Part shown: one piece after another, positions 1,370-39,001 of the stretch
Layout: every line of letters starts with the position of its first letter
How positions within the stretch are numbered: the first letter of the stretch is position 1
Made by a program: the position numbers and the translations under genes
DNA from: Trichosphaerium sp. ATCC 40318
Lineage: Eukaryota > Protista > Tubulinea
NCBI GenBank assembly: GCA_038496445.1
Contig: JALMLS010000120.1
Span: 1-64,000, forward strand
Reading direction: 5' to 3'
Length of the DNA: 64,000 bases
Notes under the pieces: generated by a model
Database searches by the model: none
Seen by the model: only the letters and a program-made list of their open reading frames with translations
What the model was told of the DNA's origin: nothing

Positions 1370-4300
1370 TTATTGATCTCCAGACAACGCTAGTGCAACA
1401 TCTAATGCGAAGCGATCTTCAAAGTGTTCGATGAGATCATCTAACCATTCTCTGACCTCTTCTTTGGTTCTCAATTTCTTTAACTCTTTTGTCATCCTTC
1501 CTTGAATGTAGGCATCTCTAACGTATGGAGATCCTTTACCAATCAAATTCTTCAATCCTGATTTGATCTTCGTTGCTTTCATCTTGGGGGCTACAGCTGC
1601 TATATCTTTGAGTAATCCTAGTAATAGATCCGTCCTATGTGCTTTATTCCTTGTATTTATGCGTCTGTGGGTCTTCTGTGTTTGTATCTCTTGCGTAACT
1701 ACCCCTTTTTTGAGTGTATCTGCCAGGTCTTCTGTCAATTGTATGTCTTTTGTTGGTTCTACATAGTCGTCATCGCCTATCTTTCGTATCTCTTCATCGC
1801 TTTCGAATTTGTTAAAAATAAATGTTTCATCCTCTGGTCTCAGGAATGAATCTATGAACGGTTTAACCCTTTCCACATTGATGACTCTGCTCATTCTGCT
1901 GTCTTCTGGTAAATTTAGTAGGCATGTGGTTGGTCCAGGTCTACTGAGTATCGTGTAGGGTCCTCTCCATTTGCAGGTAAACTTTCCTTCATCTTCTTGT
2001 CGGTATGGTACACTGAGCCATACTAGTTGACCTGCTTTGTAATCTACGAATCGTCGTTTTTTGTTGTAATATCTCGCTTGATCTTTCTTCGCTTTCAGTA
2101 TGGCTTTCTTCGCTATCTGGTATGAGTATCTCAATCTATGTGCCAGTACATCTGCCCAGTGAGACATCTTGTATTTATCTGGTATCTGTACTTTATCTTC
2201 TGATAACATATCTAGTGGTATGCGTGGTTCTCTTCCAAACATAAGCATAAAAGGCGAGTACTTGGTAGAATGATGTACTGCAGTCCGATATGCGTACAGC
2301 GCGTATGGGATCCAATAATCCCAATCGTTTTGTTGCGCATTTACGAATGACTTCAGTATTTCAACGATAGTGTGGTTGAACCGTTCGGTTTGTCCATCCG
2401 TCTGTGGATGAAACGCTGTGGTTCTTTTCGGGTGGATGTATAGCATGTTCGTCACTGTAGATAAGAACTTTCCCGTGAAATCTTTGCCTTGATCGGTTAA
2501 TACCTGTTTGGGTAGACCGTATCTGAAGCAGAATTCTTTAACGAATACCGGTGCTACGTCTGTGGCGTGATGACTGACCAATGGATATGCGTCCGACCAT
2601 TTGGTGAAGTGATCTGTGATCACCAGCATGTACTTATATCCCCTTGCTGTTTGTGGTAGCGGTCCTACTATGTCCATGGCTACCACTTGCATCGGTTCTA
2701 GGATAGGGAAGTTCACTGTGAATCCACCTTTAGGTAATCTTGGCGTCTTAGCCTTCTGGCATTTTTTGCATGATTCACACCATTCCCTCACATCTGCGTA
2801 CATGTTGGGCCAGTAGAATCGCTCACTAAGCCTTTGGTACGTTTTAATGAAACCAAAGTGTCCTGCGAATGGTGCATCGTGGCCTTGTCTCATCACGAAA
2901 TTCTGCAGCATACTTGGTACGTATATTTTGACGCGTCTGTTGCTGGCCTTTCCCTTGTGCCTTTTATCCACTTGATATAGGATATGTGTATCATCATCAT
3001 ATCCCAGGCCCTTGACTTTTGTTATGAATGTGGAGCGTCTGAATCCGTTCTCTCTGCGTGTCCATTCGGGTATGGTGCCTTTGATTATGAATTGTATGTA
3101 CGCTCTGATATCTGGATCTGTTTTCTGACATTCACTCCAGTCGATCGGTTCTGTTTTTTGTACTGTTTGCTTCAGTTCTTCACTGTCATCGCTTCTATCT
3201 ACTTGGTGGCGTGTTTCTGTGTGATCTTCATCTTCTATGTGATTTAGTTCTTCGCCTGATGATAGTGGAGGTCTTGTGAGGGCGTTGGCGTCTAAGTGTT
3301 TGGAGCCACGTTTGTATTTGAGTTTGAAGTCATAGTTCTGTAACTCTAGTAACCATCTAGCCACTAATGCTCTCGGGTTCTTTAGGTTCTGAATGTATTC
3401 CAACGGTTTATGGTCTGTATACACCATCAAGGTGAATTGAGTAAGGGATATATATCCTGCAAACTCTTTTATTGCCGATATGACTCCTAGCGTTTCTCGC
3501 TCTATTGTAGAGTATTTCCTCTGCGTAGCTGTAAAAGCTTTGCTAAAATAGGCGATCACGTGCTCTCTTCCATTTATTCGTTGTACTAGTGTAGCGCCCA
3601 ATGCTACTTGTGATGCGTCTACATGCACTTCGAATGGCAATGTGAAATCTGGATGTTGTAATATCGGTGGTGATATCAGCATCTCTTTTAGTGTTTCAAA
3701 TGCCTTTTGATGTTCTTCTTGCCATTTCCATTCGACGTCTTTACGTTTTAACTTGTTTAGTGGGCTCGCGATGTGTGCATATCGGTGTACGAATCGTCTG
3801 TAATATCCAGTTATCCCCAAGAATCGTTCCACCTCTGTGATATCTCTAGGTGCCGATGCATCTCTGATCGTCTTGATGATGCGTGGGTTGGTAGCTATTC
3901 CGTTAGCTGTCACTACATGTCCAAGGAATTCTACTTCATCTTTGAATATGACCGTCTTGTCTGCTTTCAGTTTGATGTTATGTTCTCGCAATCTTTGGAA
4001 CATGAAGTTGAGATGTACTAAGTGTTCTTCGAATGTACTGCTGAACACGATGATGTCATCTACATAACAAAGACACACTTGCCATAACAGTCCTGATAGC
4101 ATGAGGTTCATGTGTCTCTGGAACGTGGCTTGCGCATTCTTCAAACCGAATGGCATTCCTAACCATTCGTATAATCCCCATGGTGTTGCAAATGCTGTTT
4201 TGGACCGATCTCTCTTCGCCATCGCTATCTGCCAGTATCCAGAGATAGCGTCAAAGAGTGAGAAGAACTTGGCTCTGGACAATGCTTCAAGTAGTTCAGT

Positions 4301-6200
4301 GATTCGTGGTAATGGGTGTACATCTTTCTTGGTTACTTTGTTAAGCTCCCTGTAGTCGATGCAGAATCTCCATGTACCATCCTTCTTTTTTACTAACACT
4401 ACGGGCGCCGACCATTGCGATTTAGATTCTTGTATCACTCCCATTTTCAGCATCTTTTCCACTTCGTCTTTCACAATTTGGTACTTCTGAGGTGGTAAAG
4501 GTCTGTATGGTATGTGTACCGGTCTTGTTCCCTCTTTGGTGTCGATATAATGCTCTGTGCCTTTTGCATCTGCCGGTTGTTCTAATTTTGATGTAAATAC
4601 GTCTAGATTATCGGCCATGAATGTGTAGGCTACTTCTTTCTGTTCCTCTGATATGTTACTTCCCTCCATTTTGAACATGTGTTTCGCTTTCGCTACATCT
4701 TCTTGTGTCACTTTTTTGCACGATATCTTGATGTTCTTCATCTCTTTTTCGTAATCTATATCCAGAGATGTGACTTCTTCGTCGTCTGTGATAGTGCGAA
4801 AGCTGGCAATGTTGCATCCCTTCTTTATTATTCGCGTACGGTTTGACATATTCATCACTTGTGTAGGTACCATGAATCTGTTAACCACATTGCAACAGGT
4901 TCGAGCCAGTTGTATGCCCAATTTATTGAATACTACATCGTTGCCATTGACGTCATCGTGTTTGTGTGCTTCTACTATTCCTGTTTTCGCTGTCACCGGA
5001 GATGATAGTCGTGCCCAGAATACGCATTGTGAGTATTTGGGTATTTTGACTCGTCCTTCTGTGATAACGTGTGTTTCATCTGGCTTCGCTGCTGCCTCTC
5101 TGATTCTGTCGATATGAGTGATCTCGCCTTTGGCATTTGTGATGACCTCGTCTTTGAAGTCGAGTTTGAGTCCAAATTCTTTGATCATGTTGAGGCCCAG
5201 TAATAATTTGTATCTGAATTTCTTGACGACGTGAAATAGTACGTTGCGTTTATCTGTTCCGATTGTAATCGGTACTGTCGCTGTTCCAATGATCGGTAGC
5301 GGCTTGTTGTTTGCTGCGAATACTTTTGCGTGATTGTTGGTTCGCATCGCTCTCCGTTTGCTTATTCGTCGCAGAGTATCGTGACTGATGATGCTGCATG
5401 TCGCTCCAGAGTCTATGACGGCCGTGGTGTCTTTTATGTTTCCAATCATCACTTTAGCGGTGGTAATCTTGTATGAGTACTGCTTCTTAACAGGGCCGTC
5501 TGCAATAGCGTTAACACTGTCATCGTTAAGTAGTCGAGTGTGTTCTATGCAATGGTTATGCCTTTTGCCCTCTAATGGTGTCTGTACGCTTGTCTTAGGC
5601 GTCTGGGCTTGTTCACCGTCATTTTCACTGAGCAACAAAGCAACGCCGTTCATATGCGAGCGATTCGATTGTCTTTGTGCTAGAGCGCGGTTAAAAGAGT
5701 AATTATGCCCAGTGGGCGAGACAACAACAGGGTAATTCCAAATTCTTTTATTTATCTCCACAGTGTTCACACCATTGTAACGACTAGGACATCTCACTGC
5801 AGAATGATCACGGCCGCCACAGATCTGACATATGCGCTTCTCTTCGCTATCGTCTCTTCGACTATCTCTTCTGTCTCTGTCATCGCGTCTGTGGTAGTAT
5901 CTATCGTCTCGTCTCGACTTGTCGTCGCGTCTGTATCTATCACGTCTGTCTCTATCGCGTCTGTCTCGATCATCTCGCCGGTATGAGTCATCTCGTCTGT
6001 CTCTGTCGCGTCTGTCGTTATCGAGGCGTCGTCTCTTGTCTCTGTCGTAGCGGTCGTCTTCGGCACGTGGTCGAGGGCGTCTGTCCAAAGGTCGTTTGTC
6101 TCTGTTGGTGGGTCTTCTATCTCGGCGATCTTCTGCTCTTCTGTCTTTGTTTCGATCGTGATTGTACGTCTCTGGTCGGCGTGGGTTGGATGGGTTGTCT
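1370..6200 (-). CDS. pol: Gag C-terminus (RD-rich tract, CCHC knuckle) plus Pol (aspartic protease, RT, RNase H, integrase)
   Basis: CQICGGRDHSAVRC knuckle; VIDSGATCS protease; WRFCIDYRELN, MPFGLKNA and YVDD in RT; VDAS/ERE/TDHKPL in RNase H; HHCC, MDIVGP, TDQG, GQTERFN and GPY in integrase. The frame is open back to the insertion junction at 6200. Confidence 0.96.
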
Positions 6201-8636: not shown

Positions 8637-9283
8637 CAACACTGCTTCCAGAGCGAAAATAACTGGTTAAACGGACAATATTAGATAGAAAAATACAAAA
8701 ATGAAGTAGAACATTGTTTTCTATCTTTACAAATTAGGTCAATTTTTGATGTACTTTTGGAGTCATTAAAGTCGACTTAAGCAAAGTCATTTAGGTTGTC
8801 AAAAACTGGATAGAGCTAACTCACTAAAAGACGAAGACGCAACTTTCCTGTCATACACGCCTAACGCCAGCATTGCGAACTTGTCAGTGTATAGTATTTC
8901 TTCATAATTTTAATCGATTTTGATCCTACACGCTACATTATCTGGTGTGATATACAAACTCTGTTCAATCGAACATTTTATCGCTGAAGCTTGTATTTCA
9001 GAAAGCCATTCGCTATGGCTGTAGCTCTACAATATCCAAAATTGTGAGTTGTAAATAGAGGCGGTACTTAGTTCTTGCAAGATCTTACACTTTGATACTT
9101 CTGCCAAACACCTGTAGCAAACTTGAACGATACGGACAATATGTGTATAAGTATAGAATCCTATGTGTCAACCAAAACATGTTAAACAGCCGATAACAGA
9201 TTTCGTTGCTGAGGTTCTTAGCAGTTAAGCCGGACCACGACCTCTAACCACACATTGGTCTGCCGCGCTGTACATGCGTAACA

Positions 9284-10710
9284 ATGGAGGAAAAAGAATG
9301 CTGTTTGTCGCCTTTAGAGTCATTTCCACACGAGATTCTGGTGTTAATATGCCACAACCTTAATGTCGAGCATTTCCTTGCTCTTAGCGTAACTTCAAAA
9401 GAGTTTAACTAGTTTTCAGCCGACAATATTTTATGGCAGCGTCTTTACGCCCAAACCTTCATAACGGAACCTAGAGGTAGCGTTTAAAAGGAACAACACG
9501 TGATTTACAATAAACTATACAAGGTGACAACATTAAGGACGCTTTCATCTGCGAATGGAAGAACAAGGTACCGTTCTAACGAAAACCACAAAAATTCGTC
9601 ACTTCAAAGTACAAACATCATTTAACACACTTAGTTGCTGTTACTTAAAATTGACAGGTCCGTATGTCATGCTGACTTATACCTCTCATCTGGTTTTGCA
9701 GTTCTTCTTATGAACAAGACGATGTCATCAACTTACGTTCACCAATGTTGAAACTGTCTAAAAAGCAAAACAAGAAGTTAAAGTCATCGCACTACAGTAA
9801 CTCTATCTTTGCTTCCCAGTTTTTTCTTATTTTGTTTTCAAATCTGAAAAACAAGCACATGATTTACTTGTATTTAGATTAGATGCTGCTTTTTTGGATT
9901 AATAGCTTCAGGATGTGTAAGTTTGTCTAAAAGGAGATTTGTTACAAGCACAACAATATGGCGTGTTAAATCTTTTCAATAGTTTTCGACATGGTTTTTT
10001 TAAGCCACTTTATTTGACTGCTTACTCACTTTGCTTTATTTTTCTGTCTCTAACGAATATTTCCAAGACTTCTATAATATTAAGATATACGTACAATTCT
10101 TTTAGTGGTAAATACGATCCTACTATTGGCACGAATTCATACAAAAAAGCATCAATCAAAACTCTTTTGCAAAAACCATTACCCTTTGCTTATTTGTCAA
10201 TTAGAAGATACAATCCTTATATCTACCTTGAAAGGAGATTTTTATTCTTATATGGACATCACAGATACATCTGGTATGTTTAGGTACTGCGAGAGTTTCA
10301 CCATTTTATCATTTATTTTTTTGTAGTTTTGCGTCCGTGCATCTTGTTCGCCATTTTGATATATTTTTCCTTGTGTACTCCATAGCGCATAAACGTAGTT
10401 TTGAAGAGCTTTCATATTACAGATACGTTATCATGGGTACTACTCAGAGACATGTAGCCATTCTAGTACGTGTAGAAAATGTGTCTTTGCACATATTAGC
10501 AAAATGACTTTTTGTGTTCACATGTGATGTTAGGTGGCAAACAAGTCCGATTTAGAAGATGAAAGACAAGTATCATATGAAGAGGGAAAAGCGCTTGCGG
10601 AGGCATGGGGTATACCATTTGTAAGAGTGAGTTGTAAGACAGGAAAGAATATTCAAAATCTTTTCTCGCTTGCAGTTGACGAATACCTAGTTAAGGTGTT
10701 GGAACAATAA
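9284..10710 (+). pseudogene. F-box plus Ras-like GTPase fusion, multi-exon, with an in-frame TAG
   Basis: Exon 1 LESFPHEILVLICHNLNVEHFLALSVTSKEFN*FSADNILWQRLY (TAG at 9410-9412). Downstream YDPTIG, DITDTSG, LVYSI..RSFEE and VANKSDLEDERQVSYEEGKALAEAWGIPF; no CAAX. Confidence 0.75.
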
Positions 10711-10920
10711 TCATTATGTACGTTTATCTCATGTACCTAAGTACAGTATCTAATATTTGCCTGTTAGTGATAAACCGATAAAACCCCAAGCTATCAAAAT
10801 GGAGCTCTTTCAACGACTTTTATAAGCAAAATGTAAAACAATAAAAATTGTGAGTTAAAGTGTTATGCAAACCACAATGCACGTGCAAACTCATTTTCGC
10901 TAAAAAATCTGCTCGGTTAA

Positions 10921-30884: not shown

Positions 30885-32290
30885 TGTGAGTGATAATAAT
30901 TTTTTGAGTGAAAAGGTGTAGAGAGTTTTTCAAGAGTTTGTCCGATGTAATCCCGATTTCACATAACACGAAACTACACGACTCTCATGACTGTACACGA
31001 GGACCACATACCTAAGGCAAATGTTGCCTGTTGAAATAAGCCAAAACTGGTACAGCGAACAACGTCAGCTGCCTGTTGTATTAAGGAATGTAACAACATC
31101 CGCAAAAAAGGTTGTTATCTTTTTGTAGCACATATAGTGGTTTATTTTTGTGATTGCTTTATTATGTACAGATGTACTAGATGAGGTGTTGAAGGCCTTG
31201 GCAAGTGTGTAATCTATTAAAACCCAGCGTCAATCAAAAAATGCGAGCTAGAAAAATGTACAGTCAATATAGAAATACTACATACACTACCTCTCTACTT
31301 TCGCTACCTTTTAGTAGCACTGTACTGGTAGTTTGCTCTCGCTTGCAAACGCCAAAGTGCCTTAAAATAGGCCCATACTATAGGTTGCTTTGTTGATTTG
31401 TAGTAGCAATAAATAGAGCATCAAACAACGACAGTAAGTAGTCGAGGAATTCGTGATTCATAGCAAGTCTCTGGTTTTTATCAATGGCAAGTATTTGCAA
31501 AATGCTATCAAGGTGAGACTTTTTTTGTTAGAAAATAGTTGTTCTCAACTTGCTGATTTGAACGCGTGATATGTCCGAAAGAGAAAAATCAAGCCGTTAT
31601 ATACCTACAAGCACTGATACGTGGATTACTTGTAAATATATAAACCGAGAAGGTTGAGAAATAGAGTTGTACATTAGAATGACCAACTTTTTTTGTGGGA
31701 TTCCAAAGGATAATGCGTAAATGTTAATACCCGCCCAATACTTCTATGTGTAAACGAAAGCCTAAACTGGGAGTTATCCAGCAGTGCATTATCATTTGAA
31801 TACGAAGTACTAAGACCAACTCGCAACCTTATCACGACAGCAACAGGATAGCAAGCAGAAATCACCCACCTCACCCTCATGGTTGTATAAAAAATATCCC
31901 AGTGTCCTTTTCTTAAACTCACATACGTGGTGTCAAAACACTTCCAGTGCCTCCCTTTTTCGATAAATCCCAAACGCTCGCTCTGCGCTCAAGCTATCTG
32001 TCAGGGACAGATATGTTCCTTTCCTCCCAAAGATCATCTAGCTATCTCAGGTTGGTTGATTGAGGATGTGGTCTAAACACAGACATAATTTCAAAGGGAA
32101 AAGCTATGTACGAATAAAATTTTAAGACGTAAAATGCGTACGTAAGTTTTTTTGCCAGGCAAAAACAAACTGCTTACTTTTTTCACAATGCAAGTTAAAC
32201 TAACCATTTTTTATTAAACTTATACAAGTACTGGCGCTGATCAAGTCAAAAATCCACCCAAAGCCTAGGTACTTTGTTATTCGCAATGCC

Positions 32291-34275
32291 TTAATAACCA
32301 GCCACATCTAGAGCTCTGGACACCATCACATTTTTGAAAACATCACATAAGTTGACAGAGAAGTGAAGAATTGAGTAGTAATGAAAATATGAGTTTGCTG
32401 TAGTCATTGTGCTGCTTTCCTCTTCATCTGTGACTGCTCCTTCATACATATGAGAAGTGAATAATAGCTGTAGGTACTCAAAAATAGAGTCCATTGTGTC
32501 TAGAAAGAAAGCGTTAGCTAAAGAGCTTGGTCCATTCTCAAAATTCAAATAGAAAAGGGGTAAAGGATTACCTTCAGGGCAATCTGGGAACTTCTCACAG
32601 AACTCACTAGGTACTATATGGTCGTCTTTGTAGATAAATATAGCCATACTACAACCTTTAGTTTTATAAAGGATATTACACCACAACGAGAACTCATGTA
32701 TTGATCTGTGTAGTTTTGTGCCGAAGATTGGATCATGTACACGGTATTCACCAAGTACAATGTTGTACATTATTAAACAATCGTTTCCGTATGCAAGTTT
32801 ATCTTGTATGACGTTTTGGAATAGTGTGTGAGACATTGAAGGGTACATAGTCAACCTAGGAAAAATATAAAGACCAATCACATTACAGTTTTTTTTTTTC
32901 CACTTGTACATCATATCAGTACTTGACATATTACTAATATATTCAAGAGGTTTGTCAGTATGTAGGAGTGTACAACACATGTTTTCAATATGTTCTGGTA
33001 TCACTGTGTATTCTTTATCCAGTATCATTGAAGCAGCTCCTTCGAAACTACCACATTGAGATTGTTAGTACTCCAAGAAAGGACAGAAAATACATACTAT
33101 TTGGCTCGCTCATCATCTTCAACATCAATTGTTTCAAGGCCTTCAGCAATCAGTTCTTGAGCAATTGAAGACTTAATTACCTCTGCAAATTTACTCTAGG
33201 TATCACGTGTAAGTTGTGGTGTAAGTGTAAGTTGTGGTGTAAGCTAACAAAGGTGTTCTTCGAACCTCAGGATTGTCTGTTGATGCCTTCAAAGCAACAG
33301 AAAGTGTGTATTTTTGAATACATCTCTTGAACGGAGAAAAGTCTGGTGCCACTATTGACCTTGCAAAACCTCCCATGCACATGTGTATATTGTTTCCAAG
33401 GAAAAGGACATTCATTCGATACTGTTTTTTTTCCCTTTTAAGTATAGAGGAGATTTTTCGGTCAGGTAAGTTTTGATGTTTCATTCTTTTCTTCATGCGG
33501 TTTGTGTGCTTTCGCTTGGAGAGTGTCTTCTGAACCGTGTATGGATTCAAACCGGCTTTATAATACTTGTTTAAGAATGCATATGTGCTAGCTCTGCTCT
33601 TGATAATCAACAGTAAGTCATAAACAGGTAATAGTACAGCGTATCAAAAAATAGACCCAACTTACTCTACTGACTTCGAATAGCCACGTGAACTGACTCT
33701 GGCAATACTTCGAATACGGCTTTGCTGTTTGTGATATCGCAAGAATACATTTGGCATCTAGAAAGCTTATCACGTGCCATACAATCTCGGTTGGGAGCTC
33801 TAAAGAACAAATGAAAAAGGTTATTTCAAACATCAGAGAAGTTGTTGGAATCTCATTCATTACCTGTGAAGTTAGTGAATGTCGTCACCTTGGCGTTTAT
33901 GGAAATGGTATTGGTGGAATTGTGTATACGCTTCTTGTACCGGAGAGATACGAATGGGTCATTGTGAGAGACGATGTATTGATGAACACTAAAAGTTCAA
34001 ACGGTTTAATGTTTGCCCCATTCACAAGAAAACTGTAAAACCGCAAAAAACGTAATTAATGCGTTTGTTGTAGCTTTGAGAACAAAAAACGAGCGACAAG
34101 CTTCACATACTGTTGACATGCTTCCAATATTGATACAGACGCAAAATTAGGTCGTTTACTGACCCGCCAAGCCAATATATCTTCAAGAACCTGTTTTTTC
34201 TAAACAAACGGCTTAGATCCAAGTCTAAAGAGCCAAAACAACCTTTCGCAATACCAAGATGTCGTACGCTTCCAT
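32291..34275 (-). CDS. G-gamma-like / F-box / degenerate G-alpha fusion protein, multi-exon
   Basis: F-box LELPTEIVWHVISFLDAKCILAISQTAK..; G-alpha-like segments in order: KREKKQYRMNVLFLG, AKYF..MILDKEYT, KLHRSIHEFSLWCN, SMAIFIYKDD, KFPDC, DVFKNVMVSRALDVAGY. Confidence 0.65.
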
Positions 34276-34943
34276 TACTTGACTGTGGTTTATGGTATTG
34301 ACTTTATTTGTACACAAGATTTACTACAATTCTACTTCAATTTTAAGTTTTGTCTCTTTTGGGTATTTGCGCCCCTTTGTAACTGCTTTATCACGTGATA
34401 AGCTTTGTTCGTACAGTATATCGCACGTGTTCCTATAAAACATAAGTTACATTTATCGTACCGTTAAGGGAATGTAGTATCAACACCAAACTACCACGCA
34501 ATACGTTCAACAACCTTGTATTTGTTGCTCTACTTTGTGTTACTGGTGCCAAAATATAAGTTCATTGTTTTCACACTGACACATTTGTAGCCACTCACAC
34601 AACGTCGTGGTGTAGTAGAAATTGATCCGGATTTACTGTAAATTGTCAAGAGAAACACGTTTTTATTGTTTTGATCTTAGTCTTGGGAAAGAACATGACC
34701 GAATAGTTTCATTTCGTTGGTTCTTGTCCATTCTACAAGACGTTCAACTTTATCCTTACGGTCTCCGCTCATTTCCAAACCGAGACGCTCAAGACGCTCA
34801 TCAAGACCGTTGGCATCAAGGGTAGAATACTCCCAGATAAGTACCTAAAGAAGAAACCAGTAAACTGCTTTTGTGAATTCCTATTCTGACCAGGCAATAA
34901 GATACATTGTAGTACTACAATTTTTTTTGCTGAACGATTGATT

Positions 34944-36268
34944 TTATTGTATGTTACACCGCTTTCCTTTTACTTTTTTCACTTTTGCGTATGTTGCATG
35001 ACGAATAGCTTCATCAAAAGCATTTTTGAAACCAATACAAGTAAGCGCTGACATTTCAAGATATTTTGCAACATGCCACTTTTGGGCTATACTAAGACCT
35101 TCATCGTACTGTACTGATGAAGGATCTAGAAAAAAAAAAGTTAATGTCGTGTCCAAACAATCAAGTTTTCTTCGTTTTGTATGTCGTACCATCCTTTCTT
35201 AAATCGGCTTTAGTACCAACAAGTAGTATGGGTACGTCTGGTAAGTTTCTTCTGACTTCAGGTATCCAGTTATTGATAGCGTTATGTAACGATTGTCTAT
35301 TAACAAGGGAGAAACAAACCATGATAATATCCTGGTGTTTATACGCTATTTGTCGAAGTCTATCATAATCTGATCCTCCTGGCATATCTACTATAGCAAG
35401 CTGTATTATCTGTCCATCGCACATGATATTAGCTGGGTAACATTCCATGACACTTGGTATCTGAAAGAAAAAAAAAATCAAAAAAAAGAGGTCATTCAGT
35501 AGGTATGGAATTCCATTCAGATTTAAAATGTGACGTCAGTGTAAATCGTACGGTGACTAAATTAACGTCATAAGACTACGTACATATTCTCCAGGGAAAG
35601 CATTGGTTGTATAGCTTATAACAGCGCAAGTCTTTCCTAAACTGAATAAAAAAGTTGTTCACCAAAAGTTTTTTTGACTTTCTCCTTTTTCTTGAACAGA
35701 AAAACAAAAAAATCACGTGCCTACAGCAACATCTCCCACAAGTGCTAGGTTTACTTTATGAGCATACTAGTTTCGGTTTCCATAATGAGTACATACAACA
35801 ATATTTTTAGCGCACGTGACGCACCTGCATGCCTTCTTGAGCCACAATGCCTTTTTCACCAGACCATTTCAGCAACGAAACTTTAAACAACCCTTTTTTA
35901 AAATGATTAGACGACAATCAAAGAAAATGTCAATGGTTTGATACCTTTGTAGTGTTTTTGGTTTTTCATATCCTTGAATCAGATTAGAAACTGTTTAAAT
36001 ACCATTACAGACGCTCACCTCAGGTGATGGAGCCTCCCAGGACCTTACACCAGGGAATTCAAGTATATGGCGTTCCCAAAGCGTATTTTTTGTTGTAAGG
36101 TTCTCCCAATGCCAAGAGACAAAGCACAGTGAACATAAATCGTACCTAGACTCGTTAAAAACGAAAACGGGTTTTTTTGTTGATTCGCCTAACAGCGTAC
36201 CACTCTACATTGGAGAAAACCTCAAGCCAGATTATATCAGGAAGTGTTTCCCACGTTAAACCAGACAT
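34944..36268 (-). CDS. F-box plus Rho/Rac GTPase fusion with CAAX, apparently intact
   Basis: Spliced model: MSGLTWETLPDIIWLEVFSNVEWYDLCSLCFVSWHWENLTTKNTLWERH..., then VGDVAVGKTC, YTTNAFPGEYIPSV, DMPGGSDYDRLR, LVGTKADLR, YLEMSALT and RCNIQ*. Confidence 0.85.
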
Positions 36269-37918: not shown

Positions 37919-39001
37919 TCACATGGGTTTTTCTACTTGTCCTGGTACAGCAAAAATTGAAGGACAAGTAGAGAAATGAGTCATATCATTAAAGTAAGTA
38001 AATTGTGGTTCAGATAAAGTAATAGGTGGCAGTGATCGAAATAATACTGTTAACTCCCTTTGTAGTGTAGAGAACACATTAACTAAAGATGGATCATCTT
38101 TTGTTTTTAGATATGGATAACCAAGAGATATATGGAATGCATAACGCCTTGAATTGGGTATTTTCGAAGCCTTAAAGCAATGAGTTAGAACAACCAACAA
38201 AAAAAGAAAAATAGCACTTTTTTCAAATGGCAGAGAGCAGACTGAGTGCAATGACATTAATTTATGCTAAAATTCACAGAAGAATAGATTTCAGTTGCAA
38301 CGCTTCTTTTGTTGTATCTTACCTTTCCTATTTGTTTTCTTAATCCTCTTATTCTCTGCTCTTCATTTCGGTTTGATGTTACCAAGTTAACTCCAATACA
38401 CTGCTCCTGACGAATACCAAAGGTCTTGAATGCCATTTTAAAAGAAGAAGGTTTTTCTTTCTGTATCTCAAAAATATTTGATGTTCTTGACACAATCGTA
38501 TCAACTGCTTCTTTAAAAGTAGTATCAGAATCAAACCCAGCGCTTTTCCATTTAGATGTCAGTCTATTTTTATCATTTTCTGTGAACAAGCTGAAGATTG
38601 TCATGTGGAAACTTGATTGAGGTAGCATAGAAAAACAAGATCCAACAGGACTTTTGTTTATAGTATTCTGAGCTTCACAGAGAGCATCATACCATATAGG
38701 ATGTGTTTCTTTCTTTATAAAGCATATAACAGTAGTACCAGGGAATCTTCTATAGCTTCCATCCTCATTTAGTTTCCTTCCAACTGCATAAGCATAGTCT
38801 CGTTTTTTCTTGCCAACATCAGAATTCGTTTGTTGTTGCCTTTGTTGGGTATTATTTTGTTTTCTTTTGTACGTCACCTGGTTATTAGCACCAGATGGTC
38901 CCCATGGAGATGATCCTGATGACTCTGTTGAGTTAAATAAACAAATCGCTTATTTTGAAGAGTTATGATTGCGTACTATTGTTGGAAGGCCCAAACGACA
39001 T
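37919..39001 (-). CDS. 2H phosphoesterase, DUF1868/LigT-like
   Basis: KLNEDGSYRRFPGTTVIC, LPQSSFHMTIF and YAFHISLGY give two HxT/S motifs. Confidence 0.8.

What the first reader, a model, noticed from the sequence alone, without database searches (positions are those of the whole stretch)
32291..34275. G-gamma-like / F-box / pseudo-G-alpha triple fusion
After the F-box, G-alpha landmarks appear in the right order, but the P-loop GAGESGKS, switch-I Arg/Thr, DVGGQ and NKxD Asn are all lost while the frame stays open. The spliced N-terminus ASVSILEACQHVHQYIVSHNDPFVS resembles the G-gamma/GGL motif (VSxA..L..Y....DPL). One chain carrying both partners of G-beta could clamp G-beta and deliver it to SCF (inference). 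Caveat: joining the GGL part needs a 25-nt intron (33888-33864), shorter than the other introns I measured here.
Basis: partly seen in the sequence, partly recalled or inferred. Interest (0 to 1): 0.85.

Follow-up and report, generated by a model that had tools for sequence, protein, structure and literature searches.

The report
F-box gene with possible dead G-alpha
This is a real, expressed, fast-evolving F-box (ubiquitin-ligase adaptor) gene whose long C-terminal part may be a badly eroded relic of a G-protein alpha subunit, but the claimed G-gamma-like head is at chance level and the 25-base intron is not needed.

Summary
I rebuilt it as 9 exons and 480 aa with ordinary GT..AG introns of 43-122 nt. 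RNA contigs confirm five of the eight introns, including the junction that gives ...EACQ-H-VHQY.

A normal 64-nt intron (33863-33800) joins exon 3 to the F-box in frame. Direct RNA proof of this junction is missing.

- **F-box:** probable. Pfam F-box-like scores 22.3 bits, E 1.2e-4, just under its cut-off of 24.3.
- **G-alpha:** standard searches do not see it (Pfam, PDB phmmer, 1.8 billion representatives, ESM Atlas, my own G-alpha HMM). A C-terminus-anchored profile alignment beats shuffles (0/1000, z about 3.7-3.9; block shuffles p about 0.003-0.01). It pairs G-alpha-specific segments in order. This is suggestive, not proven.
- **G-boxes:** all absent.
- **Context:** F-box-Rho and F-box-Ras fusion genes lie in the same window. 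First-stage notes of this scan, which I could not test, report F-box-G-alpha genes on other DNA of this genome.
- **Not done:** the spliced protein could not be folded, because it has no reference.

The parts
34243..34275 (-). Exon 1 (ATG 34275; MEAYDILVLRK)
   Evidence: First ATG after an in-frame stop. The X1 RNA contig runs 39 nt upstream of the 34243 junction.
34200..34242 (-). Intron 1, 43 nt, GT..AG
   Evidence: Joint 34199->34243 in an X1 contig.
34111..34199 (-). Exon 2
   Evidence: X1 contig piece 34111-34199.
33989..34110 (-). Intron 2, 122 nt, GT..AG
   Evidence: Joint 33988->34111 in X1.
33864..33988 (-).
   Evidence: X1 contig covers 33887-33988. In relative B the adjoining 30 letters differ by 3 synonymous and 2 conservative changes in this frame (loose end at 33909). 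Model.
33800..33863 (-). Intron 3, 64 nt, GTAATG...CTTTAG (predicted, not seen spliced)
   Evidence: Keeps the frame from exon 3 into the F-box. Relative B has a 2-nt insertion behind 33850 and diverges strongly beyond 33837, as expected for non-coding sequence.
33666..33799 (-). Exon 4: F-box
   Evidence: Pfam F-box-like 22.3 bits, E 1.2e-4; F-box 19 bits.
33599..33665 (-). Intron 4, 67 nt, GTAAGT..AAG (predicted)
   Evidence: no read joint.
33266..33598 (-). Exon 5: linker plus putative beta1/P-loop remnant (NVLFLGNNIHMCMGG) and start of the helical-domain-like part
   Evidence: Contigs of X1 and X2. N-half profile score z 1.8.
33196..33265 (-). Intron 5, 70 nt
   Evidence: Joint 33195->33266 in X1.
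33098..33195 (-). Exon 6
   Evidence: X1 and X2 contigs.
33048..33097 (-). Intron 6, 50 nt
   Evidence: Joint 33047->33098 in X2.
32910..33047 (-). Exon 7 (AKYF...EYTVIP segment, aligned to the G-alpha sakYY...dYvPt segment)
32856..32909 (-). Intron 7, 54 nt, in frame (predicted)
   Evidence: GT..pyrimidine tract..TAG; not covered by reads.
32572..32855 (-). Exon 8: best G-alpha-like stretch (YNIVLGEY, RSIHEF...CN, SMAIFIYKDD)
   Evidence: The top hhalign local hit falls here, P 0.064; alignment.
32500..32571 (-). Intron 8, 72 nt, in frame
   Evidence: X2 contig jumps from 32572 to about 32489 with 10 diverged exon letters between (table 5c).
32291..32499 (-). Exon 9 with stop (alpha4/beta6/alpha5-like end, ...LDVAGY*)
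   Evidence: X1 and X3 contigs cover 32225-32473; alignment.

Best explanation
This is a lineage-specific, transcribed, rapidly evolving F-box protein gene of 9 exons and 480 aa. Residues 83-126 form an F-box, which by established knowledge of the family docks on SKP1 in an SCF ubiquitin ligase (inferred here, not shown). The 354 residues after it are the substrate-recognition part. They are most likely a heavily eroded G-alpha-derived pseudo-GTPase that can no longer bind nucleotide: the P-loop, switch II and the G4 Asn are gone. It would serve only as a fixed protein-binding surface. The 82-residue N-terminal extension comes from three spliced upstream exons and has no recognisable family. 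The gene belongs to a local set of F-box-GTPase-fold fusions, with F-box-Rho directly upstream and F-box-Ras 23 kb away.
For: Gene model and splicing. F-box. G-alpha signal: C-anchored profile alignment 3.3 bits against -23 +/- 7 for shuffles (0/1000), with block shuffles reaching it in 3-10 of 1000. The result holds for gap-open penalties of 3-8 bits. The tail ranks first against 55 real decoy windows (z 3.5 against a maximum of 3.2). The reversed sequence and reversed profile score -33 and -17. The alignment pairs G-alpha-specific segments in order and with matching spacing, and the tail is 354 aa. The hhalign top hit is the alpha3-beta5-alphaG-alpha4 block. Context: Ras-family Pfam E 1.4e-17 behind an F-box at 34944-36268, and an F-box plus Ras-like exons at 9290-10720. 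F-box/BTB fusions to ARF-family GTPases are described as recurrent lineage-specific inventions (PMC8358228). Listed differences to relatives are 10 synonymous and 18 non-synonymous with the frame intact.
Against: No significant G-alpha match from Pfam on any exon, PDB phmmer, phmmer against 1.8e9 representatives, ESM Atlas or my G-alpha HMM (-0.6 bits; Forward score no better than shuffles). hhalign gives P 0.064, probability under 1%. The alignment deletes switch II and part of the beta2/beta3 region, which questions an intact Ras-like core. AF2 on the only referable stretch (unspliced ORF, single sequence) gave pLDDT 41, and Foldseek matches were meaningless. The F-box score is slightly below Pfam's gathering cut-off. 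The exon 3-exon 4 junction is not seen in reads.
Confidence: 0.5

Rival explanations
1. An F-box protein whose C-terminal 354 aa are an orphan, lineage-specific domain unrelated to G-alpha. The landmark resemblances are chance plus generic alpha/beta periodicity.
For: All standard homology searches are blank. One real decoy window reached z 3.2. For the C-terminal 129 aa the reversed sequence scored nearly as well (5.5 against 8.3). The hypothesis was chosen after seeing the sequence.
Against: The co-linear signal survives block shuffling (p 0.003-0.01) and several gap settings. Spacing and total length match G-alpha. Two other F-box genes in the window carry GTPase domains.
Confidence: 0.35
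2. One reading: a GGL/G-gamma-like head, an F-box and a pseudo-G-alpha in one chain, clamping G-beta and delivering it to SCF.
For: VS and DPF stand at the same 18-residue spacing as VS...DPL in G-gamma (read directly from the sequence).
Against: Pfam G-gamma is absent on the exon pieces. The G-gamma profile was vertebrate-only, which limits its reach.
Confidence: 0.04
3. A decaying or functionless duplicate: transcribed at low level, with the reading frame open by recency rather than by selection.
For: Low contig depth, 2-6. The non-synonymous excess is close to neutral (10 synonymous, 18 non-synonymous). There are no homologues anywhere. The relative's RNA contig keeps intron 3.
Against: 480 codons across 9 exons stay open with eight canonical splice sites. 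Correctly spliced contigs exist in two organisms about 8% apart. Synonymous changes are enriched relative to the roughly 1:3 neutral expectation, most clearly in exon 8 (6 synonymous, 4 non-synonymous).
Confidence: 0.1

Closest known systems
F-box proteins (SCF substrate adaptors; Pfam PF00646 / PF12937)
   Same: An LPxEI...L..L F-box motif followed by a variable C-terminal recognition region, in a fast-evolving lineage-specific gene, as in expanded F-box families.
   Different: The F-box is preceded by an 82-aa extension. The C-terminal region matches none of the usual partners (LRR, WD40, Kelch, FBA). The Pfam score is just under the cut-off.
Heterotrimeric G-protein alpha subunits (PF00503)
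   Same: The length (354 aa) and the order and spacing of weakly similar segments: the end of the helical domain (Y..x13..Y.P), the alpha3-beta5 block ending in xKxD, FP..-alpha4, a beta6-like YFHYYSIL, and a C-terminal ...L...G.x end.
   Different: No significant profile match. G1, G3 and G5 are absent and the G4 Asn is replaced. About 12 residues of switch II are missing. There is no N-terminal lipidation motif. It is fused behind an F-box.
RhoBTB proteins and the F-box/BTB-ARF fusions noted by Vargova et al. 2021 (PMC8358228)
   Same: A GTPase-fold domain, often switch-defective, joined to a cullin-RING-ligase adaptor domain. The neighbours in this window (F-box-Rho, F-box-Ras) follow the same principle.
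   Different: Those use small GTPases of the Ras superfamily. A G-alpha-type domain behind an F-box was not found in the papers I searched.
Plant extra-large G proteins (XLG), a precedent for G-alpha-like domains with degenerate nucleotide motifs (from my own knowledge)
   Same: A G-alpha-like domain with eroded G-boxes and a long N-terminal extension, acting mainly through protein binding.
   Different: XLGs remain readily recognisable as G-alpha by sequence and carry no F-box.
G-gamma / GGL domain (PF00631)
   Same: Only a VS...DP[LF] spacing in a probably helical stretch.
   Different: Profile scores are at chance and there is no Pfam hit.

Membership tests
F-box proteins | Sequence match to the F-box profile (PF00646 / PF12937) | tested here: inconclusive
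   F-box-like 22.3 bits (cut-off 24.3), E 1.2e-4; F-box 19.0 bits (cut-off 20.5); consensus LPxEI..I..L....L present. Probable, but marginally below the curated thresholds.
F-box proteins | Binding to SKP1 / assembly into SCF | not testable with these tools
   Needs co-IP, two-hybrid or multimer modelling with the organism's SKP1.
G-alpha (PF00503) | Significant match to a G-alpha sequence profile | tested here: not met
   Pfam gives no hit on any exon at E up to 10. My HMM from 55 G-alpha ORFs scores -0.6 bits with --max. hhalign P 0.064. Only a non-standard C-anchored alignment gives z 3.5-3.9.
G-alpha (PF00503) | Nucleotide-binding G-boxes (GxGESGKS, RxxT, DxxGQ, NKxD, TCA) | tested here: not met
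G-alpha (PF00503) | Ras-like fold with an inserted all-helical domain | not testable with these tools
   The spliced protein has no reference and could not be submitted. AF2 of the unspliced 245-aa ORF gave pLDDT 40.9 and meaningless Foldseek hits.
G-gamma / GGL (PF00631) | Match to a G-gamma profile across the two-helix domain, including the DPLL region | tested here: not met
0.2 bits against an HMM of 48 G-gamma proteins. The local score equals the null mean. Pfam is blank on the exon pieces.
G-gamma / GGL (PF00631) | Obligate pairing with a G-beta propeller | not testable with these tools
   Needs multimer modelling or co-IP.
GTPase-CRL adaptor fusions (RhoBTB-like principle) | A recognisable GTPase-fold domain in one chain with a cullin-adaptor domain | tested here: inconclusive
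   Met for the neighbour gene (Ras family E 1.4e-17 behind an F-box) and seen by eye for the gene at 9290-10720. For this gene the GTPase nature is only suggested.

The most novel reading that the evidence does not exclude
The genome carries a system of cullin-RING-ligase adaptors built from switch-dead GTPase folds (F-box-Ras, F-box-Rho, F-box-G-alpha, G-alpha-BTB). This gene would be its most eroded G-alpha member. A nucleotide-free G-alpha shell would act as a permanent decoy that captures natural G-alpha partners (G-beta-gamma, receptors, RGS/GoLoco proteins or effectors) and hands them to SCF for ubiquitination.
Probability: 0.15. Interest if true: 0.75.

Novelty: new variant of a known kind. 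Interest (0 to 1): 0.4.

Why it matters
If the C-terminal domain really is a dead G-alpha, this would be an F-box adaptor that uses a heterotrimeric-G-protein fold as its substrate-binding module. That would link G-protein signalling directly to SCF-mediated degradation. It would extend the RhoBTB principle to G-alpha and show how far a GTPase fold can erode while staying in use. If it is not, the gene is one more orphan member of a fast-evolving F-box repertoire. The corrected gene model also shows that no exceptional 25-nt intron is needed in this genome.

Tried and rejected
- **Pfam on every exon and ORF piece**: only the F-box.
- **PDB phmmer on the two largest ORFs**: noise.
- **phmmer of the 245-aa ORF against 1.8e9 representatives**: one repeat-junk hit.
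- **ESM Atlas on the ORF and on exon 8**: scores 0.82 and 0.72, which is noise.
- **AF2 single sequence of the unspliced 245-aa ORF**: pLDDT 41. Foldseek against PDB gave TM about 0.2, which is meaningless.
- **Folding the ORF with a G-alpha alignment as MSA:** rejected as circular.
- **Paralogues in the window:** tblastn of the spliced protein against the window found none beyond a weak F-box-region hit (E 0.34) at 9278-9595.
- **Naming the organism:** tried through the 2H-phosphoesterase ORF (no hits) and the retrotransposon pol (best about 40-50% identity to scattered animals and plants). It stays unknown.
- **Literature:** searches for F-box/G-alpha fusions found none. Only ARF-F-box/BTB precedents turned up.
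- **Alternative splices from exon 3:** donor 33953 or 33888 joined to acceptor 33800 gives stops in frame (read directly).
- **Intron positions against human GNAI genes:** three of ours lie within 1-2 residues of GNAI exon borders as I remember them, but the phases differ and I could not check the borders with any tool. I do not count this as evidence.

Full report
**The gene.** Reading the minus strand and laying public RNA contigs on 31500-35500 gives a nine-exon gene:

- exon 1: 34275-34243
- exon 2: 34199-34111
- exon 3: 33988-33864
- exon 4: 33799-33666
- exon 5: 33598-33266
- exon 6: 33195-33098
- exon 7: 33047-32910
- exon 8: 32855-32572
- exon 9: 32499-32291

The protein is 480 aa. All eight introns are GT..AG and measure 43-122 nt.

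Contig joints confirm five introns. Introns 34242-34200, 34110-33989 and 33265-33196 are seen in run X1, which matches the window exactly in its main pieces. Introns 33097-33048 and 32571-32500 are seen in run X2, a relative about 8% diverged. Contig depth is low (2-6).

**The 25-nt intron.** It is not needed. If exon 3 is read on through 33888-33864 (VTTFTNFT), a standard donor CAG|GTAATG at 33864/33863 and a pyrimidine-rich acceptor ...TTCTTTAG| at 33800 remove 64 nt. The frame then enters the F-box exactly at E-LPTEIVW.

- The shortest confirmed intron here is 43 nt.
- Relative B has a 2-nt insertion behind 33850 and loses similarity beyond 33837. That suits an intron.
- The 30 letters upstream of 33909 in B differ from the window by three synonymous and two conservative changes in the exon-3 frame.
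- No read joint covers exon 3 to exon 4.
- The X1 contig ends at 33887, the last base shared by both models, with no continuing contig.
- B's contig keeps the intron at exon-like depth.

My odds are about 0.7 for the 64-nt intron, 0.1 for the 25-nt intron and 0.2 for an unspliced form.

**F-box.** Exon 4 matches Pfam F-box-like (22.3 bits, E 1.2e-4; cut-off 24.3) and F-box (19.0 bits; cut-off 20.5), starting at its first residue. It is probable, though marginally sub-threshold.

**G-alpha: standard methods.** None of them sees it.

- Pfam finds nothing on any exon at E up to 10.
- PDB phmmer gives only noise.
- phmmer of the 245-aa ORF (exons 7-9 with two in-frame introns) against 1.8 billion representatives returns one repeat artefact.
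- ESM Atlas look-alikes are at noise level.

For a targeted test I fetched 120 metagenome loci carrying the GAGESGKST pattern. From them I took 55 full-length G-alpha ORFs and built an HMM. With filters off, the spliced protein scores -0.6 bits with no real alignment, and the tail's Forward score is no better than shuffles. The best local hhalign hit lies exactly on TKLHRSIHEF...MAIFIYKDD...FPDCPE...FEYLQLLF against alpha3-beta5-NKxD-alphaG-alpha4, but with P 0.064.

**G-alpha: anchored alignment.** A diverged full-length relative may carry signal too thin for local methods, so I aligned the 354-aa tail to the profile with both C-termini anchored.

| Test | Result |
|---|---|
| Real tail | 3.3 bits |
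| Residue shuffles | -23 +/- 7; 0 of 1000 reach the real score; z 3.7-3.9 |
| Shuffles of 10-30-residue blocks | 3-10 of 1000 reach it |
| Reversed sequence / reversed profile | -33 / -17 bits |
| Gap-open penalties 3-8 bits | result holds |
| Gap-open penalty 11 bits | result fades |
| 55 real non-G-alpha windows, each z-scored on its own shuffles | maximum 3.2, against 3.5 for the tail |
| C-terminal half alone | z 3.0 |
| N-terminal half alone | z 1.8 |

The alignment pairs these segments in order:

- AKYF...(13)...EYTVIP with sakYY...dYvPt
- YNIVLGEY with ydqvLaEd
- RSIHEF..WCN with RmeEal..icN
- SMAIFIYKDD with tsiiLfLNKkD
- FPDCPE..FEYL with the pre-alpha4 and alpha4 segment
- SYFHYYSIL with eiythvtcA
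- ...ALDVAGY with ...LkesGll

About 12 residues of switch II are deleted. The G1, G3 and G5 motifs and the G4 Asn are absent.

This is real but modest evidence, with p of about 0.003-0.01. It is not corrected for the fact that the family was chosen by looking at this same sequence.

**Structure.** The only referable stretch is the unspliced 245-aa ORF as a single sequence. It gave pLDDT 40.9 and meaningless Foldseek matches.

**GGL.** From 48 of the hits I built a profile.

- The 82-aa N-terminus scores 0.2 bits.
- The best gapped local score equals the shuffle mean; 873 of 2000 shuffles do as well.
- Pfam shows no G-gamma on the exon pieces.

The profile is vertebrate-only, which limits its reach. 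Even so, nothing supports a GGL domain or the single-chain G-beta clamp.

**Context.**

- The gene directly upstream on the same strand (36268-34944) is an F-box (LPDIIWLEVF) followed by a Rho-like domain. Pfam Ras scores E 1.4e-17, with DMPGG in place of DTAGQ.
- At 9290-10720 on the plus strand an F-box is followed by Ras-like exons (YDPTIG, DITDTSG, NKSD).
- First-stage notes on other windows of this genome mention F-box-G-alpha genes with recognisable G-boxes and G-alpha-BTB fusions. I could not test those.
- F-box and BTB fusions to ARF-family GTPases are described as recurrent lineage-specific inventions (PMC8358228).

This context raises the prior that the tail is GTPase-derived.

**Selection.** Of the 28 differences to relatives listed, 10 are synonymous and 18 non-synonymous. 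That points to weak constraint with an intact frame, as is typical of fast-evolving F-box genes.

**Verdict.**

| Reading | My odds |
|---|---|
| Real, expressed F-box gene | about 0.9 |
| C-terminal domain is an eroded G-alpha relic | about 0.5 |
| GGL head | under 0.1 |
| 25-nt intron used | about 0.1 |

The mechanism, an SCF adaptor that uses a nucleotide-free GTPase shell as its binding module, is inferred from the F-box family and from the neighbouring genes. It is not shown.

Noticed in passing
window 34944-36268 (-): F-box (MSGLTWETLPDIIWLEVF...) fused to a Rho-like GTPase. One exon matches Pfam Ras at E 1.4e-17. Switch II reads DMPGG instead of DTAGQ, G4 reads TKAD, and the C-terminus is CAAX-like (CNIQ).
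   Followed up: partly
window about 9290-10720 (+): Another F-box (FPHEILVLICHNL...) followed by Ras-like exons (YDPTIG, DITDTSG, NKSD, SCKTG). This is a third F-box-GTPase-type gene in the 64-kb window.
   Followed up: partly
window 34399-34863 (-): A strongly expressed terminal exon (contig depth about 100-140) encoding a SAP-like ...ERLGLEMSGDRKDKVERLV... end, with its stop at 34677. It lies between the two F-box genes. Transcripts continue upstream of 34844 with sequence that is not in the window. Either the intron is very long or the expressed copy is elsewhere.
   Followed up: partly
window 33421: Contigs of two different organisms (X1, X2) both match down to 33421 and then continue with the same 255 unrelated letters, which are absent from the window. 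Unexplained; possibly a short chance match in an A-rich stretch.
   Followed up: partly
window 33887: The X1 contig covering exons 1-3 ends exactly at the last base shared by the 25-nt-spliced and the unspliced sequence. No continuing contig exists on either path, so this may be coincidence or a graph branch.
   Followed up: no
window 1370-6088 (-): An intact 1572-aa Ty3/gypsy-type pol ORF (protease, RT, RNase H, integrase). The closest database proteins are only about 40-50% identical.
   Followed up: partly
window 38257-38877 (-): An ORF with a 2H-phosphoesterase domain (DUF1868, E 1.4e-15) and no word-sharing homologues in the 5.8-billion-protein collection.
   Followed up: partly
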